Positions 2,388 through 44,819 of a DNA stretch of 46,012 nucleotides are shown piece by piece (positions within the stretch are counted from its first letter, which is position 1; each line of letters opens with the position of its first letter). Source of the stretch: Chiloscyllium plagiosum. Lineage: Eukaryota. The stretch lies in NCBI RefSeq assembly GCF_004010195.1, contig NC_057757.1, forward strand, positions 3,986,538-4,032,549. The letters are read 5' to 3'. Both the position numbers and the translations under genes were made by a program. The notes beneath the pieces were generated by a model that worked only from the letters and a program-made list of their open reading frames with translations, did not search any database and had not been told where the DNA came from.

Positions 2388-4209
2388 CTGAGAGAGGAAG
2401 AAATAACTTGCCTTTATAGAGTACCTTTCACATCCCCAGAAGATCCCCTTAATTCACTCTGAGCTGACACAGAGAATAACAAAGGTTAAAGGAGCAGAAC
2501 AAATCATAAAATGCAACCAAGAAACTTACTAGAAAGGTCTTCAATGTGTTTGGGTTCCTTTCTGTATTGATTTGTCCTGTTTCCTGGGGCAACAGAGATA
2601 TCTTTATATCCTCAGAATGTCCCAACATAATTTACAATTAACTTTTCTCAAATTCCTTCCACAACCTTTAATTGCGATGTCACGCTGACCAATTTACACA
2701 CAGTAAAATCCCAAATGAGCAAATAAGTTAGAAGATTAAGCAATTTGCTTTGTTTCCTCTAGTCTTGCTTGAGGGTGAACAGAATAGTCAGCAGATATCA
2801 TTATCCTTCTTTGATATATCTTAAAAAAAAACAGAGAATGTTGGTGAAACTCAACAGGTCTGGCAATATATATGCAGAGAGAAAAACAGGGTTAACATTT
2901 TGAATCTGGTATGAAAGGAGCTGGAAAATGGTAGTTTTTACATGATTGATGGAGGGGAAGAAGAGGAGTGAGAGAATGGTGAGGGTTCCCAGATTAAAAG
3001 ACAATGGGAGTACTAATCATGGTGGTAAAGGAGCAATTGAGATGAAAAATAGGTGTAAATGAAGGGTTTAATAGGAAAAAAGTGATCCACTTTGTTGATA
3101 TCAAACTCAACAAGACCCAAACAAAACTTATTGAGGTGGGGTGGGGGTGTGGCATGTGAGATGGAAGAGTATATAAGAAAAATGAAGTCGCTCTCTGAAG
3201 GTGTGGAATTCAATATTGAATCATACAAACTGTCAAGTTCCTGAGTGGGGAAATAAGGAGTTGTTCCTCAAACTAAAGAACTGCAGATCTGCAAGGATCT
3301 GTTCTGGGGCTACTGATGTGTGTCATCTTTGATAAATAACCTGGATGAGGGCGTAGAAAGATGGGTTAGTAAATTTGCGGATGACACTAAGGTCGGTAGT
3401 GTTGTGGATAGTTGGATGTTGCAGGTTACAGAAGGACATAGATAAGCTGCAGAGCTGGGCTGAGAGGTGGCAAATGGACTTTAGTACAGAAAAGTGTGAG
3501 GTGATTCACTTTGGAAGAAGTAACAGGAATACAAAATACTGGGTTATTGGTAAGATTCTTGGTAGTGTAGGTGAGCAGAGAGATCTGTGTCCATGTATAT
3601 AAATCCCTGAAAGTTGCCACCCAGGTTGATAAGGTTGTTAAGAAGGCATATGGTGTGTTAGCTTTTATTAGTAGAGAGATTAAGTTTCAGTGCCATGAGG
3701 TCATGCTGCAGCTGCACAAACTCTGGTGAGGCCGCACTTGGAATATTACATACAGTTCTGGCCACTGTATTATAAGAAGAATGTGGAAGCTTTGGAAAGG
3801 GTTCAGAGGAAATTTACTAGGATGTTGTCTGGTATGGAGGGAAGATATTATGAGGAAAGGAAAAGGGATTTGAAGCTGTTTCCATGAGATAGAAGGAGGT
3901 TGAGAGGTGACTTAACTGAGACATATAAGATAATCAGAGGGTTAGATAGGGTGGACAGTGAGACCTTTTTTCCTCAGATGGTAATGGATAGCACGAGGGA
4001 ACATAGCTTTAAATTGAGGGGTGATAGACATAGGACAGATGTCAGAGGTAGTTTCTTTACTCAGAGAGTAGTAAGAGTGTGGAATGCCCTGCCTGAAACA
4101 GTAGTAGACTTGCCAACTTTAAGGACGTTTAAGTGGTCATTGGATAGACATGTGGATGAAAATGGATTAGTGTTGGTTAGATGGGCTTCAGATTGGTTTC
4201 ACAGGTCAC

Positions 4210-4411
4210 AGCACAGCAGGTCAGGCAGCATCCAGGGAACAGGAGATTCGACGTTTCGGGCACAGGCCCTTCTTCAGGAATGGATTCCTGAAGAAGGGCC
4301 TTTGCCCGAAACGTCGAATCTCCTGTTCCCTGGATGCTGCCTGACCTGCTGTGCTGTTCCAGCAATAAAGTTTCAACTTTGATCTCCAGCATCTGCAGAC
4401 CTCACTTTCTC
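4210..4411. mobile_element. Penelope-derived palindromic mini-element, family A, inserted in a CR1 3' end
   Basis: Near-perfect inverted arms; TSD ttcacaggtcac at 4198-4209 and 4412-4423. Confidence 0.8.
4282..4321 (+). ncRNA. Minimal type I hammerhead ribozyme, family A
   Basis: GGAUUC-CUGAAGA-A-GGGC(CUUU)GCCC-GAAA-CG-UC-GAAUCU: core boxes, stem I GAUUC/GAAUC, stem II 4 bp, palindromic ACGU stem III; predicted cut after 4315. Confidence 0.75.
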
Positions 4412-4724
4412 TTCACAGGTCACCACAACATCGAGGGCTGTAATGTTCCATATTCTACATTCTATGATGCCAGAGATCTGAAACAAAAACAGAAATTGCT
4501 GGCAAAAATCAGCAGAGTCTGGCAACATGCATGGGGAAAGAAAAAGCAGAGTTAATTTTGATTCTTCTTAGTTCATTGGTACTGTGGAGCCCTTTGCCAC
4601 ATCCTGTACAGTTACGTAGGAGCCCCGTTGAATTTCCTGACTGGAAGAGGGCAGCTGAGACATTGATCACTGCTTTAGGAGTCATAGAGGTTATTTTTTA
4701 AATCATTATTTTTTATATAGCACG

Positions 4725-5072
4725 GGCAGGCAGTGGAGTAGTGGTAATGTCACTGCATTAATCACCCAGAATGTCACGTTAATATTTCTGCAGACATAGG
4801 GACAAATACTATTGTGGATGATGGGGAAATCTGAATTCAGTATAAATCTGAATTTAATAAGAAAACTAACCTAATGGTGACATTTAAAGCACTGTAAATT
4901 GTCATTGATAAACAAAATGTTCACTAAAGTCCTTTTGGAAAGGAAATCTGCCACTTTATTTGCTCTGGCCTATGCGTGACTCTAGGCTTACAGTAATATG
5001 GTTGTTTCTTAACTACCCTCTGGTCATGGATCTTGGCTTGCCAGTGCTCCCATATTTCCTGAATAAATAAAA
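4725..5072 (+). mobile_element. Third SINE family, old; minus-strand pieces at about 9330-9470, 24190-24420 and 40040-40260
   Basis: Shared ttcactaa.gtcctt..ggaaggaaatctgc..tctggcct..gtgactc core. Confidence 0.6.
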
Positions 5073-5334
5073 TGTCTTTTTTGTCTATTCTTCCATCTAT
5101 GGAATGCTTTATACAGCTCATGTTAAAGATGGCAATAGCAAATTGTTTCTGGAGGGGTTTGATTCTCAGGAGGACAGTCAGAGGTTGACCTGTCAGAGCA
5201 GTGACTGTTCCCAAACAATGAACTGGGGATTGAACCCACAATTTGTTGTCTTGCAGTGTTCCTATTTCACAGCAGCACAGAATTGTTATTGTACAGAAGG
5301 AGGATATTCAGCCCATCTTGCCTGCACTAGCTCT

Positions 5335-5655
5335 TGAAACACATCCATCATAGGACAAGTGAAACAGAGACACGCACGAGAATCCCAAGAAGCATGGCAT
5401 TCCAACTGGAACTCTATCAACAAACACATTGTCTTGGATTCCATTTACCACCCACTGAAGGAAAGAACAGGAAATGACATCACCACAGGAAATGATATCA
5501 CCACAGGAAATGCCATCACCAACCCAAGGAAACCGAAACACAAAAATAGAAAGTGAGCCATACAGCCAGTGCTTCATTCAGAAGCTCACCTAGTATGGTG
5601 ACGAAACATCTGAAAACAAACATTCCAGATCAGTGAGCAAACCTACATCCAGAAC
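5335..5655 (+). mobile_element. Penelope-like family D 3' fragment
   Basis: ORF remnant QRHARESQEAWHSNWNSINKHIVLDSIYHPL plus the same 3' repeat as 34054-34507. Confidence 0.75.
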
Positions 5656-5936
5656 TACTAGTTCGCTTTGGGAAAACTGTTCAGTTTGGACAAGTTGGAC
5701 TGAAGGGTCTGTTTCTGTGCTGTGTGACACTATGACTCTATAATTCCTGTCTGTCCCCCAATACCTCTGTGCACTATTTCTACTGAAATAATCTTCCAGC
5801 GCCTCCAGGTTCTTTGTAATTTTTCAGCTGCTGATAAATCCAGCTGGAAATTTCAGCCTGCAAACTTTGATGCATGATGTGTTTCATTCTCTGCCACTTG
5901 CAGCCAATGCAGGCTGCAATGAGAATATGAAGGTCA

Positions 5937-7320
5937 AAGTTAAAAATCACACAACACCAGATTTTAGTCCAACAGCTTTATTTGAAAGCACTAGCTTTCA
6001 GAGTGCTGCTCCTTCATCAGGTGGTTGTGGAGTATAAGACCGTAAGATACAGAATTTATAGCAAAAGCTTACAGAGTTATGTAACTGAAATTATATCTTG
6101 AAAAAGACCTAGACTGTTTGTTAGGTCTCTCATCTTTTAAAATGATCATGCTGGTTTCAGTCCTTTCATATGTAAATCTCAGAACTTTTTAAAAGTCACA
6201 TTCTCAAGTGAACTTTAACAGTAGGTGCCATGTCATCTCAGATAATGCATTGAAGGTGTGAGGTGCCCTGTGTGATGCTGTCTGTGTCCCAATGTTCAGA
6301 CTGGTTCTATTTCTACAAAAGAGATTTACAGAATCTTACATGGATTCATGCAGTTTTTGAGCAAAATAAAATGTAATTCTGCAAGTACAAATTCACCCTA
6401 AAAACTTATATGTGTCCGTGTGTGTGTGTGTGTGTGGAGGGCTTATGAGCGATTTTGAAAGAGTGTGAGTGTAAAGGGGTATAAGTTGTGAGAGGGTGCG
6501 TGTATGGGAGTGCATGTGTGAGCGTATGAGAGAGAGCTTATGTATGAGAGAAGGTCTGCATGAGTGAATGGGTCTGTAGGAGTGTGTGTGTGTGTATGTA
6601 GTGCAGTGGGGTCACCTGTAGTGTGACATGAAGCAAGGTCCTGGTTGAGGACATTCCCACTGATACCCATGGTGATGGCCTCAACTGGGACCTTGGGTTC
6701 ATGTCACACTACAGATGACCCCACTGCACTACACACACAAACACACACATACATGCACACACACACACGCTCCTACAGACCCATTCACTCATGCAGACCC
6801 TCTCTCATACACAAACTCTCTCTCATACACAAACTCTGTTTAATGTGCTCACACATGCACTCCCACACTCACACCCTCTCACAGACTTATTCCCCCCTTT
6901 ACACTCACACTCACAAACATACACACTCTCTTACAGACACTCATACCAAACACCCCCCACACACAAACCCACATACATACAAACTCACAGACATATCAGT
7001 TTAATTAACACTTGCAGAATTACATTTTATTTTGCTCAAAAACTGCATGAATCCATGTAAGATTCTGTAAATCCCTTTTGCAGAAATAGAGTCAGTCTGA
7101 ACATTGAGGCCAGATAGCCTCACGCAAGCCACCTCACACCTTCAATGCATTATCTGAGGTGACATGGGACCTATTGTTAAAGTTCACTTGAGAGTGTAAC
7201 TTTTAAAAAGTTCTGGGATTTACATATGAAAGAACTGAAACCAACCATCTAAAAGATGAGAGACGTAACCAACAATCCAGGTCTTTGTACACCCCAGTCC
7301 AACTCCGGCACCTCCAAATC
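5937..7320. mobile_element. Penelope-like family B element forming a palindrome of about 1.2 kb
   Basis: Arms at about 6105-6650 and 6685-7285 include mirrored TG/CA tracts; TSD tatgaaggtca at 5926-5936 and 7321-7331; hammerhead core on minus strand at about 5988-6025. Confidence 0.75.
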
Positions 7321-7810
7321 TATGAAGGTCAGCTATAAAAATGAGATTGTTCACCCTTTCATACCTACCTGATTTGATGGACTGTCTGCGATAAACACGA
7401 AAATGATTCAAGTGAGGTGTAATATTAATAAAAACTCTTTTTCTTGGACCATTTAGAAGAGCATACAAGCTCCACAGTACGGCTGGCTATGGAGATGAAA
7501 TATCCCAGCATGCACTGCAGAGCAGCAAGTCTCCTATTAAAATGACGGGACCCGTTATTTCTGTTTGTGAAAGGTACGGGGAGAGTTCAACCTGCATTGC
7601 TCCCGCTTGTCCATCACAGTTGACGTGTCCAAAGCAACATTTCGCAATCCACAACCATGTGACAGAACACAAATGTAGAAAGGGAGAGAGGAAAAGAGGA
7701 AGAAGAGAATGAAAATAAGGAACGAATTTTAATGAAACTTGCGCCAGGCACAGTTTTACCAGTTCTAACTTGCTGCAAGAGTTCGGCTCTGATGTTTTAT
7801 TCCCAGATAG

Positions 7811-8504
7811 ATGTGGAGGTGCTGGTGTTGGACTGGGGTGGACAAAGTTAAAAATCATACAACACCAGGTTATAGTCCAACAGGTTTATTTGGAAGTGCA
7901 GTACAAGCTTTTGAAGCACTGCTTTTCGTCAGATAGCTACTGGAGTAGGATCATAGCATTTATAGGCGAAATTGGGTTCTGCAGCTGCTGGAGATTAGAG
8001 TCAAGATTAGAGTGGTGCTGGAAAAGCACAGCAGGCCAGGCAGCCTCATTTCTGATGAAGGGCTTTTGCCCAGAATGTCGATTTTCCTGCTCCTCGGATG
8101 CTGCCTGGCCTGCGTGTTTTTCCAGCACTACTCTAATTTTGACTCACAGAATTTATAGCAAAAGATCATAGTGTCAAACAAATGATGCAATATATTGAAC
8201 AAACCTAGATTGTTGTTAAGTCTTTCATTTTTAAGGATGGGTTTCAATTCATTAATATGTAAATCCAAAAATGTGACTTCAAAGAAGTTCTGGGATTTAC
8301 ATATTAATGAACTGAAACTTGCAACTCATTCTAAAAGATGAAAGCCTGAACAGCAGTCTAGGTTTGTATGACATTATGATCTTTTGCTTTAAATTCTGTG
8401 ATCTGTGATTCTACTCCACTTGCTACCTGATGAAGGAGCAATGTTCTGAAAGCTTCCAAATAAACCTGTTGGACACAAACCTGGCGTTGTCTGATTTTTA
8501 ACTT
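7811..8504. mobile_element. Penelope-like family B inverted-repeat element with a nested family A copy; further family B pieces at about 12197-12320 and 36735-37152
   Basis: aagttaaaaatcacacaacaccagg terminal sequence in both orientations and an internal inverted repeat. Confidence 0.7.
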
Positions 8505-8632
8505 CATCCCCGATTTTCACAGTGTTATTCAGGACACCTGACCACAAAGATGCTGGTTCGTTAAATATAAGGGCAGAAAGTGAGAATTCAATAACCCCCT
8601 ACTTTCTCCCCTACTCTACTATTTAATCTTTC

Positions 8633-9265
8633 ATAGAACACAGAACATAGAAAAATACAGCGCAGTACAGGCCCTTTGGCCCTCGATGTTGCGCTGATCC
8701 AAGCCCACCTAACCTACACTAGCCGGCTATCCTCCATATGCCTATCCAATTCCCGTTTAAATGCCCATAAAGAGGGAGAGTCCACCACTGTTACTGGCAG
8801 GGCATTCCATGAACTCACGACACACTGAGTAAAGAATCTACCCCTAACATCTGTCCTACCTACCACCCCTTAATTTAAAGCTATGCCCCATCGTAATAGC
8901 TGACTCCATACATGGAAAAAGGTTCTCATGGTCAACCCTATCTAAACCCCTAATCATCTTGTACACCTCTATAAAGTCACCCCTAAACCTTCTTTTCTCC
9001 AATGAAAACAGCCCTAAGTGCCTCAGCCTTTCCTCATACGATCTTCAACTTTCGGAGATCTGTGTACATGGACACCAAGATCTCTCTGCTCATCCACACT
9101 ACCAAGTATCCGACCATTAGCCCAGTACCCCGTCTTTTTGTTACTCTTACCAAAGTGAATCACCTCACACTTACCTACATTGAACTCCATTTGCCACCTT
9201 TCTGCCCAGCTGTGCAACTTATCTATATCCCGCTGTAACCTGATACATCCTTCCTCACTGTCAAA
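8633..9265 (-). mobile_element. CR1 LINE 3' portion with internal deletion
   Basis: WAERWQMEFNVGKCEVIHFG; short tandem tail (catagaa)n. Confidence 0.85.
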
Positions 9266-9718
9266 CACATCCTTCCTCACTTTCATTTTTGTCATGGCAC
9301 CATTGCCAAGTCCAGTATTGTTGCCAGTCCCTAATGGCACTTGAACTGAGTGCTTTGCTTGGCCACTTCAGAAGGCAATTAAGACCCAGCGGCACTGGCT
9401 GTTGGTATGGAGTCACATATAAGTCAAAATAGGTAAGGATGGCAGATTTTCTCTCCTAAAAGTGGAATTGATAAATTAATTTTGTACATTTTGTACGTGT
9501 CAAAAAAAACCCAAATCAAATGCCCAGAAAACCAATGATTCCTTGTTTTTAACATACTTGTGGTTGAGGCTCTGGGGGAGAGAGTTCATAAGGTTGACCA
9601 CCACAAAACATTTCTCCTCAGCTTAGTCCCAAAAGGCTGCAACTGCACATGAGCTGCCAAGTCAGTGCCAATTAAATGCTGATGCAGGCATTAGTTGAAG
9701 GGGGTGACACTCCTGTAC

Positions 9719-12049: not shown

Positions 12050-13205
12050 AAGCTCCCTGCTCAAAACCTGCCTCTACACTGCCTCTCCCACCAAACACTC
12101 ACAGGACAGGGACAGCGCGGGGTTTGATACAGAATAAAGCTCCCTCTACACTGTACCTCAGGAAACAGTCTCAGGGCAGAGACAGCATAGGGTTATGATT
12201 TGGAGTTGCTGGTGTTGAACGGGCTGGACAAAGTTAAAAATCACACAACACGAGGTTATAGTCCACCAGGTTTATTTGGAAGCACTAGCTTTCGGGCATT
12301 GCCTCTTCATCAGGTGACCACAGGTTCCACAAAGGTTAGACACAGTGTAATATTCTCTCGACACTGTTCATCAGCAAAAACTCCCAGGATAGGGACAGCA
12401 CAGGGCTAGGTATAGAGTACAGCTCCTCTAAACTGTCTCCATCAAACACTCGCAGGACAGGGATAACACAGGATTAGATACAGAGTAAAGTTCCCTCTAC
12501 ACTGTCCCCATCAAACACTCCCAGGACAGGGTTAGGTACAGACTAAAGCTCCCTCTACACTGTCCCCATCAAACACTCTCAGGACAGGGTTAGATACAGA
12601 CTAGAGCTCCCTCTACACTGTCCCCATCAAATACTCTCAGGACGGTTAGGTACGGACTAAAGCTCCCTCTACACTGTCCCCATCAAACACTCCCAGGACA
12701 GGGTTAGGTACGGACTAAAGTTCCCTCTACACTGTCCCCATCAAACACTCTCAGGACAGGGTTAGGTATGGACTAATGCTCCCTCTACACTGTCCCCATC
12801 AAACACTCTCAGGACAGGGTTAGGTATGGACTAAAGCTCCCTCTAAACTGTCCCCATCAAACACTCCCAGGGCGATTAGGTATGGACTAAAGTTCCCTCT
12901 ACACTGTCCCCATCAAATACTCTCAGGACGGTTAGGTACGGACTCAAGTTCCCTCTACACTGTCCCCATCAAACATTCTCAGGACAGGGTTAGGTATGGA
13001 CTAATGCTCCCTCTACACTGTCCCCATCAAACATTCTCAGGACAGGGTTAGGTATGGACTAAAGCTCCCTCTACACTGTCCCCATCAAACACTCCCAGGA
13101 CAGGGTTAGGTACGGACTAAAGTTGCCTCTACAGTGTACCCATCAAACACTCCCAGGATAGGGACAGCATCGAGTTAGACACAGAGTGAAGCCCTCTCTA
13201 CACTT
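12050..13205 (+). repeat. Satellite of about 56-68 bp units; other arrays at about 17875-18010, 31975-32660 and 42712-42808
   Basis: Tandem ctccctctacactgtccccatcaaacactcccaggacagggttag units. Confidence 0.92.
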
Positions 13206-14251
13206 TTAAACTGCAAGTAAACTGAATGTAAAGCTTACTTTACTTTTTTAAACTGAAAATAAAGTTCCCTCTACCATTTTAAACTGGCAGCAAAGCTCTC
13301 TCTACACTGTCGAGAGTGTGTTTGGCTGGAAAAGCACGGCAGGTCAGACAGCATCCGAGGAGCAGGAGAATCGATGTTTCGGGCATAAGCCCTTCATCAG
13401 GAATGTCTCTCAAAACTGCCAGGACAGGGATAGCATAGTGATACATGCAGATAAAGCTCCTCTTCACAGAAGCACCTAATGGTTCCTGCACAGACAGAGG
13501 CCATTCACCCTGTCGGCTCTATACTGGCTTTCCTTAGGAGCAGGTCATTAAGTGACTCACCATCACCATCCCCCTGTAATCCTGCACTTCCTGCCTTTTG
13601 AGTAACACAATGCAATTCCCTCTTGGATAACTCAATTGACCCCAGTCCCACTGCACTCTCACGGAGGCAGAACAGGAATTTCCTGAGGTGAACAAAGATC
13701 AAACCAGGAAAGTAGAGAGAGATTCATATCAGCAAGACAGGTTGGGAAGCAGTGAGAGAGAAAGAGAGACAGAGAGAAAATGAACAGCCAGAAAAATACT
13801 TAGAGATGGAGAGAGTCAGACTGAGTGTTGAATTTTTTGTGGAGGTAAAAATGGCAATATGAAGTTTTAAAGAAATGTTGATAAGATGGATATTTAAATA
13901 GACTGATAGATCTACAAAAAAAAGACAAGACAAAGATATGAGGAAAACCTGTGTTAAGGTGTTGCCTCTCATTTTAAAAATGCTGATGTCTTCTCAGCAA
14001 TAGTGATACTTTTGAAGGTAGATGGGAGTAAAGGCACCACATGACTCATTAGAGAGAGATATAAAGCTTGCAGAAGTTTAACCTGGAGGTCACCACATCT
14101 CAGGTGAGGGGGGCAGTCGAGAAGGATTATCCTTCATGGTAACTCTATGGTAGTACGATATGCAGTAAACCCACTATACATCCAACTGAGCTAACTAAAC
14201 TGAACTATGCCCTAATCAGCAGCTGGATAGATAGACAGACAGAGGGATGGA

Positions 14252-14528
14252 TGCAAAAGCAGAAATTGCTGGAAAAGCTCAGCAGGTCTAGCAACATCTA
14301 TGGAGAGAAATCAGAGTTAATGTTTTGGGTTGAGTGACCCTTCCTCAGAAGTTTTAGGGTTAAGTTTAAGGTTAAGACTAAGGTTAGAGTTAATTCTGAG
14401 GAAGAGTCACTCAGTCCAAAAATATTATCTCCGATTTCTCTCCACAGATGCTTTCAGACCCACGGAGCTTTTCCAGCAAGTTCTGTTTTTATTTCTGATT
14501 TATAACATCTGCAGTTCTCTTGGTTATT
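14252..14528. mobile_element. Penelope-like family C palindromic element; related pieces at about 2825-3290, 4465-4560 and 38977-39121
   Basis: Inverted arms agaaattgctggaaaagctcagcaggtct..; degenerate ctgaggaagRgtcactc..core; the 38977-39121 copy has TSD ccaaKtgtctaggct. Confidence 0.65.
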
Positions 14529-16239: not shown

Positions 16240-16242
16240 TCT

Positions 16243-18010: not shown

Positions 18011-19190
18011 TGGGTCCACTGCTTTTCATTATTTATATAAATGATGTGGATGTTAACATAGGAGGTATAGTTAGTAACTTTGCAGATGACACCAAAATTG
18101 GAGGTGTCTGGACAGCAAATAAGGTTAGCTCAGAGTACAACAGGATCTTGAGCAGATGGGCCAATGGGCTGAAGTGTAGCAGATGGAGTTTAATTTAGAT
18201 AAATGTGAGGTGCTGCATTTTAGAAAATCAAATCATAATAGGACTTATATATTTAATGGTAAGCTCCTGGGGAGTGTTGAAAATGTGTTGCTGGTAAAGC
18301 ACAGCAGGTCAGGCAGCATCCAAAGAACAGGAGAATCGATGTTTCGGGCATAAGCCCTTCATCAGGGCTTATGCCCGAAACGTCGATTCTCCTGTTCCTT
18401 GGATGCTGCCTGATCTGCTGTGCTTTACCAGCAACACATTTTCAGCTCTGATCTCCAGCATCTGCAGACCTCACTTTCTCCTGGGGAGTGTTGCTGAACA
18501 AAGAGACCTTGGAGTGCAGGTTCACAGTTTTTTGAAATTAGAATTGTAAGTAGATTGGATAGTGAAGAAGGCATTTGGTATGCTTTCCTTTATTGGTCAG
18601 AGCATTGAGTATGGGAGTGACTGTACAGGGCATTGGTTAAGCCACTGTTGGAATATTGCGTGCATTTCTGGTCTCCGTCCTGTCAGAAGAGTGTTATGAA
18701 ACTTGAAATATTCAGAAAAGATATATAAGGATGCTGCCAGGTTTGGAGGATTTGAGCTATAGGGAGAGGCTGAATAGGCTGGGGCTGTTTTCCCTGGAGC
18801 TGACAATCGGAGACTGAGGGGTGACCTTATAGAGGTTTACAAAATCATGAGGGACAGGACAAATCAACAAGTTATTTTCCCTGGGGTAGGGGAGTCCAGA
18901 ACTAAATGGCATAGGTTTAGGGTGAGAGGGGAAAGATATAACAGGGACCTTAGGGGCAACGTTTGCACACAGAGGGTGGTACGTGTATGGAACGAGCTGC
19001 CAGAGGAAGTGGTGGAGGCTGGTACAATTGCAACATTTAAAAGGCATCTGGATAGGCATATGAATAGGAAGAGTTTAGAGGGATATGGGCCAAGTGCTGG
19101 CAAATGGGACGAGATTATGTTAGGATATCTGGTTGGCATGGACGAGTTGGACCGAAGGGTCTGTTTCCCTATGACTCTCTGACTCTATGA
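18010..19190 (+). mobile_element. CR1 LINE 3' portion
   Basis: [28 protein letters not shown] motifs; ctatgact tail. Confidence 0.9.
18280..18480. mobile_element. Penelope-derived palindromic mini-element, family A, inserted in CR1
   Basis: Inverted arms; TSD (ctc)ctggggagtgttg at 18264-18279 and 18478-18493. Confidence 0.8.
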
Positions 19191-19619
19191 CAGTGAGAGG
19201 TAAACATTATTGTGTTATATCTCAGTTCGTTTGGTGAAACCCACCATATCTTTCTGATCCTTATGGCTTGTTGCACATGGCAGAATAAAACTTGAAGCCT
19301 GGGAAGAATTTTCTTCGACACTCCCTGTTGTAGTTTTCGCCCAGGGGGGAGACTGGGAAAATAACTGAGCAAATCAGCTCTGACACTTCCGACAATATAC
19401 CAAAGATTCAAACACTTCAAATATAGTCAGTCATCCCAAGATCTTCACTTGTGTTCAGCACACAGTCATGGATCATTCACAGAAGCGCAGAACGGTTACA
19501 CCATGGAATGAGGCCATTTAGCTTGTTGGCCTATACTGACACTGAGGAGCAATTCACTAAGTGTCCTGTCATCACCTTCCCCCCGGTCGTCTTGCACAAT
19601 CTGCCTTCAGAGAAAATAA

Positions 19620-27680: not shown

Positions 27681-27684
27681 ATGT

Positions 27685-32677: not shown

Positions 32678-32889
32678 GTTGAAACTTTATTGCTGGAACA
32701 GCACAGCAGGTCAGGCAGCATCCAGGGAACAGGAGATTCGACGTTTCGGGCACAGGCCCTTCTTCAGGAAGAAGGGCCTGTGCCCGAAACGTCGAATCTC
32801 CTGTTCCCTGGATGCTGCCTTACCTGCTGTGCTGTTCCAGCAATAAAGTTTCAACTTTGATCTCCAGCATCTACAGACCTCACTTTCTC
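32678..32889. mobile_element. Penelope-derived palindromic mini-element, family A
   Basis: Inverted arms; 15-bp TSD ctgtatggtgtcaga at 32663-32677 and 32890-32904; empty site preserved near 32470. Confidence 0.85.
32737..32770 (-). ncRNA. Hammerhead ribozyme motif, family A
   Basis: UUC-CUGAAGA-A-GGGC(CUGU)GCCC-GAAA-CG-UC-GAA on the minus strand. Confidence 0.65.
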
Positions 32890-34053: not shown

Positions 34054-34507
34054 AGTGAGTTTTGACGAGATTTGTAGCTCAGGTTGAACTGCTGGATGTA
34101 GGTTTGCTCGCTGAGCTGGAAGATTCATTTTCAGACATTTCGTCACCATACTAGGTCACATCTTCAGTGAGCCTCCTGATGAAGCACTGCTGATGTTTCC
34201 TGCTTTCTATTTATACTTCGACTGGGACAACACATCCATTCTAGGACAAGCCAAATAGAATTCCTAGAAGCATAACATTCCAATCGGAACTCTATCAACA
34301 AATACATTGACTTGGAGCCCATTTACCACCCCCCTGAGAAAAGGAACAGGAAATGACAGCACCAACACAAAGAAACCCAAACATATAAATAGAAAGCAGG
34401 AAACATCAGCAGTGTTTCATCCGGAGGCTCACTGAAGATGTTACCTGGTATGGTGATGAAACATCTGAAAATGAACCTCACAGCTCAGCGAGCAAACCTA
34501 CATCCAA
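34054..34507 (+). mobile_element. Penelope-like family D element: GIY-YIG endonuclease C-terminal remnant flanked by inverted terminal repeats, inserted in CR1
   Basis: FDWDNTSILGQAK..EFLEA*HSNRNSINKYIDLEPIYHP remnant; inverted arms; TSD aacctccctgct at 34042-34053 and 34508-34519. Confidence 0.8.
34429..34468 (+). ncRNA. Hammerhead ribozyme motif, family D (CpG-decayed); mirror copy at 34131-34170 on minus strand
   Basis: UCA-CUGAAGA-U-GUUACC(UGGUAU)GGUGAU-GAAA-CA-UC-UGA. Confidence 0.6.
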
Positions 34508-35842: not shown

Positions 35843-37062
35843 TGGTCTCAAAGAAATTTGCAAGATTTTGAAGAGGTTTGAAAGAGTAAACACTGAGACG
35901 AACAGTAAGAGAAGTTGGGGGGGAGTTGCGGTAGTGGTTGAGAGACTGGATGCTGGAGAGGGAATGGAAGTGAGAGAGATGTTGAGTAGGAGTGGGGTTG
36001 TGGGAGAGAATAGGAAAGATATTAGGAGGGAGAGAGAGATGGTGACAAACGGAAATAGAAATGGGGAGGATGAGAGAGATAAAGGAGTGAAGGGAGGGTG
36101 GAGGCGGGAGAGATTGAATGAGGAGGAAAGAGAGAGGGAGAGGCAAATTTTCCAGGTTTGGAAACTCTCCCTAAGTGTTGCATGGCCTATCCAGTTTAGA
36201 GTTGTGAATTCCTGGGTTAATGATACTGTCTCTTCCTCTCCCTGCAGACTTAATACGGTCTGACTGAGGATTTTGTTGGCTTGTTTTTCGTTCAGAAAAA
36301 CAAAACTCTGGGCAGGGACTCCAAGCAGGAATGAGTGGTCTTTAATCCCACACAGAAAGCCCCTGCCTTAACCGGGGCAGGGGGAACAGATTCAATGGTG
36401 AAGGGGAATGGAAAAATAACAAAAGGAAATGAAACACATTTTAAAGAATTGAAGAGTGATGGAGAGTAAGGATGAATCAAACCACCATTTTAAAGGGGTC
36501 AGCACTAAGGGGGTGGGGGGGGCAAGTGACGATTGCAGATGCTGGAGATGAAAGTCAAAAAGTGTAGCTCTGGAAAAGCACCATCCGAGGAGCAGGAGAA
36601 TCGACGTTTCAAGCGTAAGGTCTTCATCAAGAATGAAGAGCTGATGATGAGCTTATACTCAAAATGTCAACTCTCCTGCACCGAACTTTTTGACACAGGT
36701 ACTAAGGGGTTGAATAGCCCTCCCAAGGATGCTCAAAAACTGCATGAATTCATGTAAAACTCTGTTATCTCACTTTTTAGATTAGAATCAATCTAAACAT
36801 TATGGCATAGACAGAGAACACAGGGGGCTAACACCTTCAACATATTGTCTAGCTATCACCAATTGTTACAGCTAATCTGAGAATGCAACTTTTAAAAAAA
36901 AGATTTTGTGATTTACACATGAAAGAAGTGAAACTATCGTGGTATTCGAACAGCTGAAAGACTCAACAAACAATTAAGGTATTTTTCAATGTATAATTTC
37001 AGTTACATCACACTGTGGACTTTTGCTATAAATTCTGTGTCTTACAACTGTGTCCTCCACAA

Positions 37063-37099
37063 CCACCTGATGAAGGAGCGACGCTCCGAAAGCTAGTGG
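37063..37099 (+). ncRNA. Minimal type I hammerhead ribozyme, family B
   Basis: CCAC-CUGAUGA-A-GGAGC(GAC)GCUCC-GAAA-GC-UA-GUGG: stem I CCAC/GUGG, stem II 5 bp, palindromic AGCU; predicted cut after 37095. Confidence 0.75.
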
Positions 37100-37259
37100 G
37101 CTTCCAATTAAACCTGTTGGACTATAACCTGGTGTCGTGTGATTTTTAACTTTTATTAGTTGTAATTGTAACATCCTCCACCACTTCCTCTAGCAGCTCA
37201 AAATCAAATAAGGAATAAGTCAAGGGATCCTTTCCACCGGACAGGGGAATGTAAAATGA

Positions 37260-39583: not shown

Positions 39584-39790
39584 AAGTGACAGTGAGAACT
39601 GCAGACACTGGAGATTAGAGTCGAGAGTGCGGTGCTGGAAAAACACAGCAGATCAGGCAGCATCCGAGGAACAGGAGAATCGACCTCATCAGGCCTCATT
39701 CCTGATGAAGGATTTTTGCCTGAAACGTCGATTCTCCTGCTCCTCGGATGCTGCCTGACCTGCTTGCTTTTCCAGCACCACACTCGCGCC
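39584..39790. mobile_element. Family A-related palindromic element; related degraded copies at about 7975-8145, 13310-13405 and 36525-36695
   Basis: Same gctggaaaagcacagcaggtcaggcagcatcc arm and ctgatgaagg..gaaacgtcga core; ttcataRgagt flanking duplication. Confidence 0.75.
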
Positions 39791-40656
39791 TTCATAAGAG
39801 TGCTGCAGAATGAGCTACAATCGACAGAGGGATTTAAAAAACAAAGATGAGAGTTTGGAATGGAAGCATGGTTTAACCAGGGGCTGGGAGTGGTCACCGG
39901 GTACTGGGGAGGTTGACGAAAAGAGGGGAAAAGAGGATCTGGCGTGAGTGTGGACATGGGTGGTGTAATTTCTATTGTCCTTGCCTGCGAAAGTTAGTCT
40001 TGAATTGAACACCTCAATAACCAGTTCAGAGTCCATCACATCGCTGTAGTGCCTGGAGTCACATCAAGCCAGGTCAGGAAAGGACTGCAGATTTCCTTCC
40101 CGCAAGGACATTAGTGAACCAGTTGGGATTTTGCAACAGGCAAAGGTCACCACAACAGACATGAACTCCCAATTCCATGATTTTGCAGCCACCTAGCCAC
40201 GCTAAGGTTTCAAACTCACACCCCTGGAATATGAACCAGCGACATTACCAATTCACCGATGGAATTGATACTGCAAGTCATCGTGTTTGCTGCAGTAGAT
40301 GGTGACCAGAGGTCCCATTCACATCTCAAAGGACTAAGAGGTCTGAGGGTGATTGTCATCCAGGGCGATCAGATCAGGCAAGTCCCCATTGATGGGCAGA
40401 GTGGACTTGATGGTCTGCTCCTATGTCTCAGAGTCAGATTTCACCTTCCAACCCTGAAGAACAGCCACACCACACTCGAAATGTTAACTCTGTTTCTCTC
40501 CCCCTCCGCCCTGCTGAGTTCCTCCAACATTCTGTGCAGTTGATCCCCTGTCCCATTTTGAGTCTGAGATCCACAGCACTGACGAGACAAAATCTGGAAT
40601 CTGTTCATCCCAGCATCACACCACACACTGCCGATTGATACTCATGGCCTTCCACA

Positions 40657-41985
40657 GAGAGTCATACAGTGCGGAAACAGACCCTTCGGTCCAAATCACC
40701 CATGGCCAATCAGATATCCTAAATTAATCTAGTCCCATTTGCCAACATTTAGCTCATCTCCCTCTAAACCCTTCCTATTCATATACCCATCCAGATGCCT
40801 TTTAAATGTTGCAACTGTACCAGCCTCCACCACTTCCTTTGACAGTTCATTCCACAGATGAACCACTCTGCTGTGAAAACATTACCACTCAGGTCCCTTT
40901 TAAATCCTTTCCCTGTCACCTTAAAATTATGCTCTCAGGTTTTGGGCTCCCCTATCCTGGGGAAAAGACCTTGGCTATTCAGCCTATCCGTGACCCTCAT
41001 GATTTTATAGACCTCTATAAGGTCACGCCTCAGCCTCCGACTCTCCAAGGAAAATAGCCCTAGCTTATCCAGCCTCTCCTTATAGCTCAAATCTTCCAGT
41101 CCCGACAACATCTTTATAAATCTTTTCTCCACCCTTTCCAGTGTAACAATATCCTTCCTGTAGCAAGGCAACCAGAACTGTACACAATAGAGTCATAGAG
41201 TTGTATACAGCACGGAAACAGACCCTTTGGCCTAACTCGTTGATGCCGACCAGATATCCTAAATTAATCTAGTCCCATTTGCCAGCATTTGGCCCATATC
41301 CATCTAAACTCTTCCTATTCATATACCCATCCAGATGCCTTTTAAATATTGTAATTGTACCAGCCTCCACCACTTCCTCTGGCAGCTCATTCCATGCAAG
41401 CACCACCCTCTGCGTGAAAACATTGCCCCTTATGTCCCTTTTAAATCTTTCCCCTCTCACCTCAAACCTATGCCCACTAGTATTGGACTCCCTAACCATG
41501 ACTATTCCCCTATCCATGCCCTTCATGATTTTATAAACCTCTATAAGGTCACTCCTCAGCCTCCGATGCTCAGGGAAAATAGCCCCAGCGTATTCAGCCT
41601 CTCCCTGTAGCTCAAACTCTTCAACCCTGGCAACATCCTTGTAAATCTTTTTCTGCACCCTCTCAAGTTTAATAATATTTTTCCTATGGCAGGGAGACCA
41701 GAATTGAATGCAGTATTCTAAAAGTGGCCTAACCAATGTCCTGTACAGCCACAACATGACCTCCCAACTCCTGCACTGACCAGTAAAGGCAAGCCTACCA
41801 AAAGCCTTCTTCACTACCCTGGCTACCTGGGACTCAACTACCAAAGAACTATGAAACTGCACTCCAAGGTCTCTTGGTTCAGCAACAATCCCCAGGCCCT
41901 TACCATTAAGCATATAAGCCCTATCCTGATTTGCCTTTCCAAAATGCAACACCTCGCACTTACCTAAATGAAACTCCACCCGACA
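40657..41985 (-). mobile_element. Two adjacent CR1 3' portions (40657-41187 and 41188-41985)
   Basis: ORF 41269-42033 is a CR1 RT C-terminus; two separate 3' tails. Confidence 0.92.
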
Positions 41986-42419
41986 TTCCTCATGGCACTT
42001 GTCTTTTGTGAGATTTGATTGTAACCTGCACACGCAGCATGAAGACCCATATGGTGCAGTGGTAATGTCCTTGGAAACCTGGGATCTGGTCCCACTGGTC
42101 CCTGAGCTGTGACATGTAAGGGAACGGAGGTAAATGGGGAAGAGGCAGGGTGATCAGATCAGACTCAAATCATTGAACAGCAGGGCAGACTCAATGGGCT
42201 GAATGGCCCACATTAGTTCCAGATTGTTCACCACGTGAGTTAGCAGCCACGGAGAAGGAGGAGGAGACAACAGCACCAAAACAAAGATAGTGGCGCACAT
42301 AAAACTGAACAAATCTGTGTTGTGAGGTGCCAGAGCATCTTCTAGGCCTTAGCTTTCCGTCCTGTCGTGTCTCCCCTCTCTGTCAGTGGCTCATTCACAC
42401 TGAACTGTTCCTTTGGCAG

Positions 42420-42559: not shown

Positions 42560-42809
42560 GTAAGTCAAGTCTCACTTGACTGGCCCAGAGCCAAATATTT
42601 TGCACATTGTTTTATCTCAGGGATCGGGGAACTCTGCCCACGAACTGAGGGCATGAATCTCACACTTCATTCAGGCTAAAGAGTAAGGCTACATCTAACT
42701 GTTAAACCAAGAGCAAAGCTTCCTCCACACTGTCCCCCATCAAACACTCCCCAAGACAGGGATAGTGTAGGGTTAGATAAAAATTAAAGTGCCCTCTACA
42801 CTGTCCTCA

Positions 42810-43430
42810 TGGTCAGAGGGTCAGTGCTGAGGGAGCATCACACTGTCAAAGAGTCTGTCCTGAGGAAGTGCAGTACGGTTGGAGTCAGTACTAAGGGAGC
42901 ACTACACTGTCAGAGGGTCAGTGCTGAGGGAGTGCTGCACTGTTGGAGTCAGTACTAAGGGAGCGCTACACTGTCAGAGGGTCATGCTGAGGGAGTGCTG
43001 CACTGTTGGAGTCAGTACTAAGGGAGCACAACACTGTCAGAGGGTCAGTGCTGCACTGTTGGAGTCAGTACTACGGGAGCGTTACACTGTCAGAGGGTCA
43101 GTGCTAAGGGAGCACTGTCCTGTAGAAAGGTCAGTGCTGAAGGAGTGCTGCAATGTTAGAGGGTCAGTGCTGAGGGAGTGCCACACAGTTGGAGCATCAG
43201 TGCTGAGGTATTGCTGTACTGTCAGTGGGTCAGTGCTGAGGGAGTGCTGCACTGTCAGATTCAGTGCTGAAGGATCACTGCACTGTCAGTGGGTCAATGC
43301 TGAGGGAGTGGGCAGCGTCAGAGAGTCAGTGCTGAGCAAGTGGGCACTGTTGGAGGGTCATTGCTGAGGAAGTGAGCAGGGTCACAGGGGCTATCTTTCA
43401 GAGGGGACATTAAACTGGGGCATCTGTCTC
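42810..43430 (+). repeat. Minisatellite of about 31-33 bp units derived from a Deu-SINE segment
   Basis: Tandem cagtgctgagggagtgctgcactgtcagagggt, running into Deu-like ctatctttcaga..acattaaactgggg. Confidence 0.85.
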
Positions 43431-44303
43431 ACCTTTTGAATGACAGTACAATATCCTGCGGCAGATTTTGGATGTGTACAATTGTCCTGGGATTGCACCA
43501 ATCTGTTCCCTCATGTACAATGTAAGCAGTCAATCTGGACATAATATTCAGCTGCTTCATCAATGACCTTGCCTCCATCATAAGGTCAAAAGTGAGGATT
43601 TTTGCTGATGATTGCACAACGTTCAGCACCATTCGCAATTCCTCAGATACTGAAGCAGTCCAATGCAGTTGACTTGACTAGTCCACCATCAGCACCCAAC
43701 TTGAAGTATTCACTCTCTCCTCAGACAGCACCTTCCAAACCCATGACCACTTCCGTCTGGAAGGACAAGTGCAGCATATACATGGGAACACCACCCCCTG
43801 CAAGTTACCCTCTGAGCCCCTCACCATCCTGACTCAGAAATATATCAGCCGTTCTTTCAGTGTCGCTGGGTCAGAATCCTGGAACTAACGGCGCTGTGCG
43901 GATGTCCCTACAGCATACGGGATTACAGCGGGTCAAGAAGGCAGCTACCCCTAGTTTCTCCAGGGGCGATGAGGAATGAAGGAACAATTTCGTGTTTGCG
44001 GGGTCTTTCCATAGGCATCCCACTTTCCTGAAATAGCCACAGTGACTACACTTCGATAGAGTACTATTCCTGGGGGAGAAACAGGGGACTGAGTCGGATG
44101 ATCGTATTGAATGGCGGAGCAGGCCAGAGGGGCCGAAGGCCCTACTCCTGTTGCTATTTTCCACGTTTCTATTGTGCTCCATGTCTTTAACACTAAAGCC
44201 TCATTGTCATAAGCTTCGCCTGCAGGAGGTCTTCAAGTCAAGACTCTAGGCCCAGCTGCTTAGAATCTGGGGGCAGTTCTTCACCTGATCATCAGATGGG
44301 TAC

Positions 44304-44527
44304 TGAAAATGTGTTGCTGGAAAAGCGCAGCAGGTCAGGCAGCATCCAGGGAACAGGAGAATCGACGTTTCGGGCATAAGACCTTCTTCAGGAATAAGCC
44401 ATTCCTGAAGAAGGGCTTATGCCAGAAACGTCGATTCTCCTGTTCCCTGGATGCTGCCTGACCTGCTGCGCTTTTCCAGCAACATATTTTCAGCTCTGAT
44501 CTCCAGTATCTGCAGACCTCACTTTCC
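44304..44527. mobile_element. Penelope-derived palindromic mini-element, family A
   Basis: Inverted arms each with a hammerhead core; TSD catcagatgRgtac at 44290-44303 and 44528-44541. Confidence 0.8.
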
Positions 44528-44819
44528 CATCAGATGAGTACGTACTGTTTTTGGAAACACCCCCCCAACCAACTCAATTTCCCTCTCCCCACCCCTCCAG
44601 AGGCTCAGACTGAGCCCCAGAGGACAGGAGTTGGGGGTTCTGATGCATGTAGAGGGCCTGATGAAGATAAACTTGTTCTTCGCGAAACCAAGATTGAGAT
44701 TGGGGCAGGGGGAGGTTCTTGAGAGAGTCGATGAACATTGGTGGGGGGGGGGGTGTAGGGGGGTAACAGTAGGCCATTCAGCCTGTCAACAAGATCCTGG
44801 CCGATCCTGGTGGCGTTCC

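What the first reader, a model, noticed from the sequence alone, without database searches (positions are those of the whole stretch)
4198..44541. At least four families of palindromic Penelope-derived elements, each carrying a minimal hammerhead ribozyme
Seen in the sequence: more than a dozen insertions or fragments fall into four families with unrelated flanks (A: 4210, 18280, 32678, 39584, 44304; B: 5937, 7811, 36735; C: 14252; D: 5335, 34054). The best-preserved copies keep CUGAnGA-N-stem II-GAAA-NN-UH, while stem II covaries between families (GGGC/GCCC, GGAGC/GCUCC, GUUACC/GGUGAY) and so does stem I (GAUUC/GAAUC, CCAC/GUGG, UCA/UGA). Stem III is reduced to a 4-nt palindrome (ACGU or AGCU), and one extra base follows the CUGAnGA box. 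Established: Penelope-like elements carry minimal type I hammerheads that are thought to work as dimers. Inference: this genome holds a very high density of such ribozymes, many inside introns of immune genes. Whether these shark families are already described cannot be judged without a search.
Basis: partly seen in the sequence, partly recalled or inferred. Interest (0 to 1): 0.8.

Follow-up and report, generated by a model that had tools for sequence, protein, structure and literature searches.

The report
Ribozyme-bearing Penelope-type retroelement insertions in shark DNA
The window holds about 17 short insertions left by Penelope-like jumping genes, each built around a small hammerhead ribozyme motif; this is a real but already known kind of element, seen here in new shark families.

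Summary
I count 17 insertions or fragments, about 11% of the window. They carry 24 hammerhead-derived arms, and 10 arms pass a strict core-plus-stem-II test against 0.39 expected by chance.

The extra base after CUGANGA, the G10.1-C11.1 pair and the ACGU/AGCU palindrome all match the "min-HHR" of Penelope-like elements (PLEs) described in 2014.

The PLE origin is supported here:
- All 10 two-armed insertions carry a 30-39-nt "tail" on exactly one arm.
- Tail-less arms end at fixed internal positions.
- Target-site duplications are 8-16 bp, and one insertion has an exact empty site.
- Both family D copies hold the C-terminal end of a GIY-YIG endonuclease gene just upstream of the ribozyme.

- A and C are related families.
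- The palindrome is probably made at integration and is not a family trait.
- Stem I of family A has a U·U mismatch in most copies.
- Most cores are decayed at two CpGs.
- No two same-strand copies lie close enough to dimerise in cis.
- The intron claim is untested.

Cleavage was not tested: the raw RNA run gave no reads. First-stage readers noted the same thing 64 times elsewhere in this genome. It is a new member of a known kind.

The parts
4210..4411 (+). Family A two-armed insertion. The arms 4210-4281 and 4284-4357 are 99% complementary and the 34-nt tail is at the right end only. The TSD is TTCACAGGTCAC (12 bp). Intact hammerhead motifs lie at 4283-4321 (+, cut after 4315) and 4282-4244 (-). 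The element sits inside the 3' region of a LINE-like fragment.
18280..18477 (+). Family A two-armed insertion with arms 94% complementary and the tail at the right. The TSD is 13-16 bp and overlaps the element ends. The motif on the - strand is at 18370-18332; the + arm is cut off inside the CUGANGA box.
32678..32889 (+). Family A two-armed insertion of 212 bp. Its ends are exact because a paralogous empty site lies at 32420-32560. The TSD is 15 bp (CTGTATGGTGTCAGA), the arms are 98% complementary, and the 34-nt tail is at the right only. An intact motif lies at 32772-32734 (-).
39584..39790 (-). Family A two-armed insertion with arms 89% complementary and the tail at the left. The TSD is 11 bp with 1 mismatch. 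The motif at 39697-39735 (+) has a decayed stem II.
44304..44527 (+). Family A two-armed insertion with arms 93% complementary and the tail at the right. The TSD is 14 bp with 1 mismatch. Both motifs have one stem II mismatch.
7964..8130 (-). Family A two-armed insertion nested in a B insertion. The tail-bearing left arm is cut down to about 30 nt plus tail; the tail-less right arm is full length. The core reads AGAA where GAAA is expected. The majority of public contigs read GAAA at 8072-8073.
13291..13412 (-). Family A single-arm copy. Its motif at 13405-13367 passes the strict test (15.2-16.2 reads CA). A possible 10-bp TSD has 1 mismatch.
36540..36690 (-). Family A decayed copy with both motifs degenerate. 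The outer end of the right arm is missing, so it was left out of the tail count.
14252..14520 (+). Family C two-armed insertion with arms 81% complementary and the tail at the right. Both arms read AAAA where GAAA is expected. Its 3' region and tail are homologous to family A.
4476..4560 (-). Family C fragment: the 3' region only, with no ribozyme core.
5937..7320 (+). Family B two-armed insertion of 1.38 kb with an 11-bp TSD (TATGAAGGTCA). The left arm (-) ends tail-less at 5937 and carries the motif at 6025-5986. The right arm lacks the motif through an internal deletion and carries the 34-nt tail at 7283-7320.
7811..8506 (-). Family B two-armed insertion with the A copy 7964-8130 nested in it. 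The left arm has the tail (its end at 7810/7811 is confirmed by contig loose ends) and a degenerate motif. The right arm ends tail-less at about 8506 and carries the motif at 8422-8461 (+). A probable 8-bp TSD has 1 mismatch.
12197..12320 (-). Family B single-arm copy with tail and a decayed stem II.
36730..37153 (+). Family B single-arm copy that ends at the tail-less position. It holds the best B motif at 37062-37101 (cut after 37095). The roughly 330 nt upstream contain no open frame.
34054..34507 (-). Family D two-armed insertion with a 12-bp TSD (AACCTCCCTGCT). The short left arm (34093-34215) carries the 39-nt tail at 34054-34092. The long right arm ends tail-less. Motifs lie at 34172-34128 (-) and 34427-34471 (+). 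An endonuclease-coding remnant at 34204-34353 (+) is broken by a stop and a frame shift.
5335..5652 (+). Family D single-arm, 5'-truncated copy. An open 72-codon remnant of the C-terminal end of a GIY-YIG endonuclease lies at 5338-5553. It is followed by a hammerhead remnant whose CUGANGA box is deleted. The copy ends at the tail-less position.

Best explanation
These are insertions made by the reverse transcriptase-endonuclease machinery of Penelope-like elements (PLEs). Family D consists of 5'-truncated copies of an autonomous element. It reads: end of the GIY-YIG endonuclease gene, then the hammerhead, about 45 nt, the inner start site for reverse transcription, a 39-nt tail, and the outer start site. 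Families A/C and B have the same 3' layout but no coding sequence in this window, so I read them as non-autonomous passengers. The family A unit is about 128 nt and begins 5-6 nt before the ribozyme box.

The palindromes arise at integration (inferred). Both strands of the target are cut and both prime a cDNA. One cDNA starts at the outer site and carries the tail; the other starts at the inner site and does not. The two cDNAs are joined head to head at the 5' end of the RNA or at a truncation point.

The hammerhead is part of the template RNA. Any processing role would belong to transcripts of tandem master copies elsewhere in the genome. The copies in this window are dead ends that decay, fastest at two CpGs inside the catalytic core.

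Shown here: the motif, the architecture, the TSDs, the empty site and the endonuclease remnant. Inferred: priming on both strands, the role of the ribozyme, and the non-autonomy of A and B.
For: Motif:
- 10 strict hits against 0.39 expected.
- Features of 14 arms.
- 110 of 132 pair cells paired, against 26-56 of 132 in slid controls.
- The isolated A and B motifs fold into stems I and II as their minimum-energy structure.

Architecture:
- 10 of 10 two-armed insertions (A x6, C x1, B x2, D x1) have the tail on exactly one arm. The 36540 copy was left out because one end is missing.
- Tail-less ends fall at fixed places: reference position 46-47 in 3 of 3 B arms, 41-42 in 2 of 2 D arms, 42-46 in 3 of the 6 tail-less A arms (24, 33 and 36 in the others), and about 50 in C.
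- If each arm took the tail independently, one tail per insertion in all 10 has probability at most 0.5^10.
- TSDs of 8-16 bp were found at 9 of 13 insertions tried: 4210, 18280, 32678, 39584, 44304, 34054, 5937, 13291 and the 7811 complex. They were weak or absent at 14252, 12197, 5335 and 36540-37153.
- An exact empty site fixes a 212-bp insertion with a 15-bp TSD.
- Palindrome centres and arm lengths differ in every copy, and the truncated arm can be either one (contig loose ends behind 8044).

Coding link:
- The 72-aa frame at 5338-5553 finds 28 proteins at E<=0.001 among 1.84 billion.
- One is P0019, with RVT_1 and GIY-YIG domains above Pfam's cut-offs and the match lying C-terminal to the GIY-YIG N-terminal motif.
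- Close hits are 'uncharacterized proteins' of Chiloscyllium punctatum and Rhincodon typus.
- tblastn places the same region in both D copies.

Literature:
- PLE insertions often have an adjacent inverted 5'-truncated copy and a 30-40-bp tail at one end (PMC8557442, passages).
- An Anolis PLE protein cuts and extends both strands. It starts reverse transcription internally about 85-92 nt past the ribozyme cut site, and the tail equals the stretch between two start sites (PMC11167929, main text).

Family state: the majority letters of public contigs restore GAAA at 8072-8073 and C11.1 at 6000.
Against: - No reverse transcriptase or endonuclease remnant lies next to A, C or B in this window, so their PLE dependence rests on architecture alone.
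- No direct tandem (pseudo-LTR) arrangement is present.
- Rfam's models give no hammerhead match even at E<=10.
- No cleavage evidence: the only raw RNA run laid 0 reads, which is no test.
- In the Anolis system ribozyme mutants did not change insertion in vitro, and no reads ended at the cut site in vivo. Self-cleavage may therefore not matter for mobility.
- That study also saw no difference in start sites between the two strands, so it does not predict the strict one-tail rule seen here.
- The 4210 left arm ends 22 nt short of the usual inner site.
- Ten insertions from one window is a small sample.
Confidence: 0.75

Rival explanations
1. The palindrome itself is the mobile unit: a hairpin-shaped non-autonomous element copied as a whole from palindromic masters.
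For: The two arms of one copy resemble each other more (89-99%) than different copies do (77-93%). The 4210 copy looks like a whole palindrome truncated at its far end.
Against: Centres differ in all six A palindromes. Either arm can be the short one (7964 and 34054 against 4210). Single-arm copies exist (13291, 12197, 36730, 5335). A reverse transcriptase would have to read through a hairpin of -159.5 kcal/mol. High arm-to-arm identity is equally expected if both arms were copied from one RNA.
Confidence: 0.15
2. The motif is kept as a binding or folding module for the element's protein, or for starting reverse transcription, and not as a self-cleaving ribozyme. The hammerhead similarity is then functional only in shape.
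For: In the Anolis PLE, ribozyme mutants did not affect insertion, cleavage needed the protein, and no in-vivo reads ended at the cut site (PMC11167929). Activity of min-HHRs in vitro is low even as dimers (PMC4209133). Most family A copies have a mismatch in stem I and an alternative fold that pairs the core.
Against: Three unrelated families keep all core nucleotides, with compensatory changes in stems I, II and 15.2-16.2. This is the pattern expected of a working hammerhead.
Confidence: 0.3
3. Family A copies are solo monomers of a non-LTR retrozyme. Tandem units would be cut by the ribozyme, circularised, and reverse-transcribed once around the circle. That would explain the fixed 5' end just upstream of the box.
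For: At least one arm starts 5-6 nt before CUGANGA in 6 of 8 A insertions, and no arm extends beyond that point with recognisable shared sequence. Animal retrozymes are reported as PLE derivatives with many solo monomers, and one cartilaginous fish was included (preprint 10.64898/2026.07.22.740005).
Against: There is no head-to-tail A pair in the window. Described retrozymes carry canonical ribozymes with loop-loop contacts, not min-HHRs (PMC7229834, passages). The contig joints are confused by cross-copy mapping and show no clear tail-to-head junction.
Confidence: 0.2
4. They are foldback DNA transposons (MITEs), or SINEs moved by the abundant CR1-like LINEs, that carry a hammerhead-like motif by chance or by capture.
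For: They have inverted arms and TSDs. LINE-like fragments are common in the window, and two A copies lie in or beside them.
Against: TSD length varies from 8 to 16 bp, the ends are asymmetric with a one-sided tail, and there are single-arm copies. BLAST finds no similarity between the element tails and the LINE fragments. There is no poly(A) or microsatellite tail. The endonuclease remnant in D is of the GIY-YIG type.
Confidence: 0.04

Closest known systems
Minimal hammerhead ribozymes (min-HHR) of metazoan Penelope-like elements (Cervera & de la Pena 2014, PMC4209133; I read parts 1-2 of 4)
   Same: Type I layout, no real helix III, palindromic 15.2-16.2, an unpaired base between positions 9 and 10.1, G10.1-C11.1, a short helix I, several families per genome with compensatory changes, mostly solo copies, and pairs on opposite strands 100-700 bp apart. 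All of this is seen here.
   Different: The host group: that paper lists bony fishes, coelacanth, Xenopus and reptiles, but no shark in the parts I read. Stem II here is 4-6 bp, against 7-8 bp in the schistosome families. The opposite-strand pairs here directly abut (2-5 nt between arms in family A).
PAc, the Poseidon-clade PLE of Anolis carolinensis studied in vitro (Mob DNA 2024;15:12, PMC11167929; main text read)
   Same: The ribozyme lies a short fixed distance upstream of two alternative start sites for reverse transcription that bound a 30-40-nt tail. Both DNA strands are cut and extended. In the shark families the cut site lies 41-62 nt from the inner end, and the tails are 30-39 nt.
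   Different: In PAc the ribozyme overlaps the start of the ORF. In family D it follows, and perhaps overlaps, the end of the endonuclease gene. The strict rule of one tail per two-armed insertion (10 of 10) is not predicted by the in-vitro data.
PLE insertion architecture: pseudo-LTRs, an inverted 5'-truncated copy and a one-sided tail (Craig et al. 2021, PMC8557442; passages only)
   Same: An adjacent inverted 5'-truncated copy, a 30-40-bp extension at one end, strong 5' truncation.
   Different: There are no direct pseudo-LTRs in this window, and most units are far shorter (about 128 nt for A) than a 3-4 kb element.
Non-LTR retrozymes of animals (Cervera & de la Pena 2020, PMC7229834, passages; Li, Clavereau & Pollet 2026 preprint, abstract and Results part 1)
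   Same: Short non-coding elements with a type I hammerhead, linked to PLEs, with many solo monomers.
   Different: Retrozymes are defined by tandem arrays and circular RNAs and carry canonical ribozymes. Here there are no tandems, the motifs are minimal, and the copies are inverted pairs.

Membership tests
Minimal type I hammerhead of PLEs (min-HHR) | Conserved core CUGANGA ... GAAA ... U16.1 H17 in type I order | tested here: met
   10 arms pass the strict descriptor against 0.39 expected. 14 parsed arms keep U16.1 and H17 (C, A or U). 24 arms in all derive from the motif.
Minimal type I hammerhead of PLEs (min-HHR) | [quoted passage not shown] | tested here: met
   The extra base is present in 14 of 14 arms. 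10.1-11.1 is G-C in 9, G-U in 4 and broken in 1.
Minimal type I hammerhead of PLEs (min-HHR) | Helix III reduced to a palindrome (15.1-16.1 and 15.2-16.2) that can pair only between two copies | tested here: met
   ACGU (families A and D) or AGCU (family B) in 10 of 14 arms. The other 4 read CA or UG at the CpG.
Minimal type I hammerhead of PLEs (min-HHR) | Compensatory changes in stems between families | tested here: met
   Both-sided changes occur between A, B and D at 10.2, 10.3, 10.4, 1.1, 1.2, 1.3 and 15.2-16.2. 110 of 132 cells are paired against 26-56 in slid controls. Only three independent lineages are available.
Minimal type I hammerhead of PLEs (min-HHR) | Self-cleavage, as a dimer | not testable with these tools
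   The raw RNA run X19 laid 0 reads, and contigs cannot show ends. No same-strand pair lies closer than about 5 kb.
Hammerhead families of Rfam | A match to a curated covariance model | tested here: not met
   0 matches at gathering score. None of the 19 matches at E<=10 is a hammerhead family; the palindromes draw weak miRNA-hairpin matches. This is expected if the models require helix III.
Penelope-like element (insertion product) | A reverse transcriptase plus GIY-YIG endonuclease gene belonging to the element | tested here: inconclusive
   Family D: met in part. Both copies carry the C-terminal endonuclease region (E 7.5e-05 to P0019, which has RVT_1 and GIY-YIG; E 8.8e-08 to a C. punctatum protein). 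Families A, C and B: no coding remnant.
Penelope-like element (insertion product) | An adjacent inverted 5'-truncated copy | tested here: met
   10 two-armed insertions.
Penelope-like element (insertion product) | A 30-40-bp tail at one end only | tested here: met
   10 of 10 two-armed insertions. Tail lengths are 34 nt (A), 34 nt (B), about 30 nt (C) and 39 nt (D).
Penelope-like element (insertion product) | Direct pseudo-LTRs or partial tandems | tested here: not met
   The window holds no head-to-tail pair of any family.
Penelope-like element (insertion product) | Target-site duplications of variable length | tested here: met
   8-16 bp at 9 of 13 insertions tried, one of them proven by an empty site.
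Non-LTR retrozyme | Tandem arrays of units with a canonical type I ribozyme, expressed as circular RNA | tested here: not met
   There are no tandems in the window and the motifs are of the minimal type. Circular RNA could not be tested.
MITE / foldback DNA transposon | Symmetric terminal inverted repeats with a TSD of fixed length | tested here: not met
   The ends are asymmetric (one-sided tail), the TSDs are 8-16 bp, and single-arm copies exist.

The most novel reading that the evidence does not exclude
Each two-armed copy may be a fossil of one integration in which the two target strands primed two cDNAs with a fixed division of labour. One cDNA starts at the outer site and carries the tail; the other starts at the inner site. 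If so, shark genomes hold a very large natural record of the both-strands mechanism so far seen only in vitro for one lizard element, and they add a rule (one tail per insertion) that the in-vitro work did not show. Two further points go with this. Family A would be a roughly 128-nt passenger made of little more than the ribozyme and the start module. In the family D lineage the RT-endonuclease gene would end inside its own ribozyme, with the stop codon in loop II.
Probability: 0.35. Interest if true: 0.5.

Novelty: new member of a known kind. Interest (0 to 1): 0.3.

Why it matters
For annotation, about a ninth of this window is made of these elements. Repeat pipelines may file them as unknown repeats, foldbacks or microRNA-like hairpins, and Rfam-type scans miss the ribozymes entirely.

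For the biology of Penelope-like elements, the copies give clean natural examples of two-armed insertions with exact ends. These could be counted genome-wide to test how both DNA strands are used at integration.

For ribozyme biology the finding adds little. The motif type, its odd features and its link to these elements have been in print since 2014.

Tried and rejected
- Rfam at gathering and at E<=10 found no hammerhead family.
- A covariance model built from eight family A arms found 14 A or C arms at E<=0.016 but neither B nor D. It is too sequence-specific for a general scan. MAFFT misaligned B and D against A, so I parsed the structure by anchors in scripts instead.
- Pfam on LINE-like frames and on the D frame gave nothing. 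Only the V-set exon scored.
- No open frames lie upstream of the B ribozyme.
- Two pattern scans of metagenome contigs for the D and A motifs found nothing, so I have no outside loci.
- RNA evidence: no listed holder is on record as RNA, and the one raw RNA run laid 0 reads. The contig joints were dominated by cross-copy mapping and I did not use them.
- Literature: four searches found no paper in the held library that describes hammerheads in shark PLEs. Supplements were not opened; those of PMC4209133 and of the preprint may list cartilaginous fish. Repbase and Dfam are not available here, so I cannot say whether these families are already filed.
- The organism names of the runs are coded.
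- That the LINE-like frames are of the CR1 kind is recalled, not tested.

Full report
WHAT IS THERE

A self-comparison of the window, reading of the cited places and an inverted-repeat scan give 17 insertions or fragments:
- Family A: 8 copies (4210, 18280, 32678, 39584, 44304, 7964, 13291, 36540).
- Family C: one copy (14252) and one fragment (4476).
- Family B: 4 copies (5937-7320, 7811-8506, 12197, 36730).
- Family D: 2 copies (34054, 5335).

By my sum of their coordinates they cover about 5.07 kb of 45.4 kb of read sequence, or 11%. Six places were missed. The three assembly gaps lie at least 960 bp from any element. I did not bridge them and no claim depends on them.

THE MOTIF IS REAL

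A strict descriptor (CUGANGA, 0-1 extra base, stem II of at least 3 bp, GAAA) hits 10 times on the two strands. In 300 dinucleotide-preserving shuffles the mean was 0.39 (sd 0.67, maximum 4). With a stem of at least 4 bp it hits 9 times against 0.11. The hits are copies of repeats, so the independent events are three families.

In 14 parsed arms:
- An unpaired base follows the box in 14 of 14.
- 10.1-11.1 is G-C in 9, G-U in 4 and broken in 1.
- 15.2-16.2 is C-G or G-C in 10.
- Stems I, II and 15.2-16.2 differ between A, B and D by changes on both sides.
- 110 of 132 pair cells form standard pairs, against 26-56 of 132 when partners are slid. The structure was read from the same sequences, which helps it.

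The isolated A and B motifs fold into stems I and II as their minimum-energy structure, with z-scores of -1.9 and -2.5. The D motif and the commoner A variant prefer a fold that pairs part of the core.

Rfam finds no hammerhead at any threshold. Instead the palindromes draw weak microRNA-hairpin matches far below gathering score.

CORRECTIONS TO THE OBSERVATION

- A and C are homologous over the 3' region and the tail, so there are three unrelated lineages.
- The GAUUC/GAAUC stem I is particular to the 4210 copy. The other six parsed A arms have a mismatch in stem I (U·U at the third pair in four of them). So does most contig depth at place 4318 in runs X1 and X2 (68,419 of 75,521 and 47,200 of 52,584), though only 39% in X3.
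- Only four arms keep every feature.
- Most losses sit at two CpGs inside the core, C11.1-G12 and C15.2-G16.2. Arms read CA or UG, or U at 11.1, and both C arms read AAAA.
- The majority letters of public contigs restore GAAA at 8072-8073 and C11.1 at 6000. The families as a whole therefore carry the intact core, and these copies are decayed.

WHY PENELOPE

Architecture. Every one of the 10 two-armed insertions has an extra 30-39 nt (34 in A and B, about 30 in C, 39 in D) on exactly one arm. The 36540 copy was dropped because one end is missing. Tail-less arms stop at fixed places: reference position 46-47 in 3 of 3 B arms, 41-42 in 2 of 2 D arms, 42-46 in 3 of the 6 tail-less A arms (24, 33 and 36 in the others).

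Ends. TSDs of 8-16 bp flank 9 of 13 insertions tried. For 32678-32889 a paralogous empty site in the window shows the 15-bp target once, which fixes the ends to the base.

Fit with published work. This is the published signature of PLE insertions: an adjacent inverted 5'-truncated copy and a 30-40-bp tail, often at one end only (PMC8557442, passages). It also fits the in-vitro work on an Anolis element. That protein cuts and extends both strands and starts reverse transcription internally, 111-118 nt into the ORF with the ribozyme cut at +26. The tail there is the stretch between two start sites (PMC11167929).

Coding sequence. The region upstream of the D ribozyme translates to a 72-aa open frame (5338-5553). 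It finds 28 proteins at E<=0.001 among 1.84 billion.
- P0019 carries RVT_1 and GIY-YIG above Pfam's cut-offs. Two more (P0021, P0014) carry GIY-YIG just below the cut-off.
- In all three the match lies about 55-60 residues after the start of that domain.
- Named relatives are 'uncharacterized proteins' of Chiloscyllium punctatum and a Rhincodon typus model.
- tblastn puts the same region in the second D copy, where it is broken by a stop and a frame shift.
- A, C and B show no coding remnant.

HOW THE PALINDROMES ARISE (INFERRED)

- Centres differ in all six A palindromes.
- The short arm can be the tail-bearing one (7964, 34054) or the other (4210).
- One B arm has an internal deletion that removes its ribozyme.
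- Four copies have a single arm.
- Contig loose ends behind 8044 show that other family members run on where this copy's arm stops.

This fits two cDNAs made at one integration and joined head to head better than it fits the copying of a palindromic master. The arms of one copy are 81-99% complementary, which gives a range of ages. The 4210 and 32678 copies are the youngest.

WHAT THIS MEANS FOR FUNCTION

In a two-armed copy the two motifs lie on opposite strands, so a transcript holds one sense motif. The nearest same-family, same-strand pair is about 5 kb apart. A whole-copy transcript is predicted to form a hairpin of -159.5 kcal/mol (A) or -242.4 kcal/mol (D) that buries the core. These copies are therefore unlikely to cleave. 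Any ribozyme role belongs to tandem masters elsewhere.

Nothing here tests cleavage. The raw RNA run gave 0 reads and the other runs are contigs of uncertain kind.

Published work warns that min-HHR activity is low even as dimers (PMC4209133; PMC6765202, passages). In the Anolis element, cleavage needed the protein and was not needed for insertion.

ABUNDANCE AND SPREAD

Contigs of three coded organisms (runs X1, X2, X3) pile on the families. In X1, summed depth is 84,000-158,000 over the A copy, against 4-9 over four low-depth (apparently unique) bins. The tool warns that this is no copy number. First-stage readers left 64 notes with the words Penelope and hammerhead in this genome. Two of those notes link hammerhead termini to GIY-YIG fragments. 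I could not read those windows.

COMPARISON WITH WHAT IS KNOWN

That includes the extra base, G10.1-C11.1, the palindromic 15.2-16.2, families with compensatory changes, solo copies, and pairs on opposite strands. Penelope elements are reported in the whale shark genome (PMC8455134, passage). Animal retrozymes have been tied to PLEs, with one cartilaginous fish sampled (preprint). My four searches found no paper in the held library on hammerheads in shark PLEs. Supplements, Repbase and Dfam were not available.

VERDICT

This is a real feature that was correctly recognised. It belongs to a known kind and is present here in new families. The parts worth a specialist's look are:
- the strict rule of one tail per two-armed insertion;
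- the very short family A unit, whose 5' end lies 5-6 nt before the box;
- the family D gene, which appears to run into its own ribozyme.

Noticed in passing
window 34128-34172 (-), 5563-5627 (+), 34427-34471 (+): Read in the frame of the endonuclease gene, the family D ribozyme box is coding (the box and stem II read T-E-D-V-T). A UAG stop sits in loop II in 2 of 3 D arms. Two Chiloscyllium punctatum proteins (P0005, P0010) end exactly at ...EDVT, and a third (P0008) reads through. The gene of this PLE lineage may therefore end inside its ribozyme, whereas in the Anolis element the ribozyme overlaps the gene's start. The proteins are automatic predictions and close paralogues, so the support is thin.
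   Followed up: partly
window 4251-4314, 18314-18408, 39634-39776, 44347-44448: The family A palindromes draw sub-threshold Rfam matches to microRNA precursor families (for example 47.5 bits against a gathering score of 97). This is a likely source of false microRNA calls. It also hints that such hairpins could feed small-RNA pathways if transcribed.
   Followed up: no
window 3900-4480; 18480-19192; 25628-26440; 40655-42033; 8701-9340: Several fragments of a LINE-like element have open frames and no Pfam hit. I take them for the C-terminal part of a CR1-type reverse transcriptase, which is recalled and not tested. The A copy at 4210 is inserted into one of them, with the 12-bp TSD taken from the LINE sequence.
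   Followed up: partly
window 12372-13204, 17878-18015, 31980-32670, 42710-42810: A satellite with a period of roughly 58-70 bp occurs at four places. A 1.2-kb block (16803-18009) is duplicated at 30905-32112 (87%). Each copy of the block is followed by satellite and then by an A insertion, but the two insertions have different TSDs and so are independent events.
   Followed up: partly
window 9675-10037 (-): An open frame with an immunoglobulin V-set domain (Pfam E 5.6e-09). This is the exon noted by another first-stage finding.
   Followed up: partly
window 572-1224, 19657-20102, 42812-43374, 28225-28401: Further tandem repeat arrays unrelated to the hammerhead families. The one at 28225-28401 abuts an assembly gap.
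   Followed up: no
window 4000-8600 against runs X2 and X3: Contigs from two other coded organisms hold families A, B and D at high depth but hardly any of the unique sequence. The families are therefore shared by at least three organisms in the archive.
   Followed up: no
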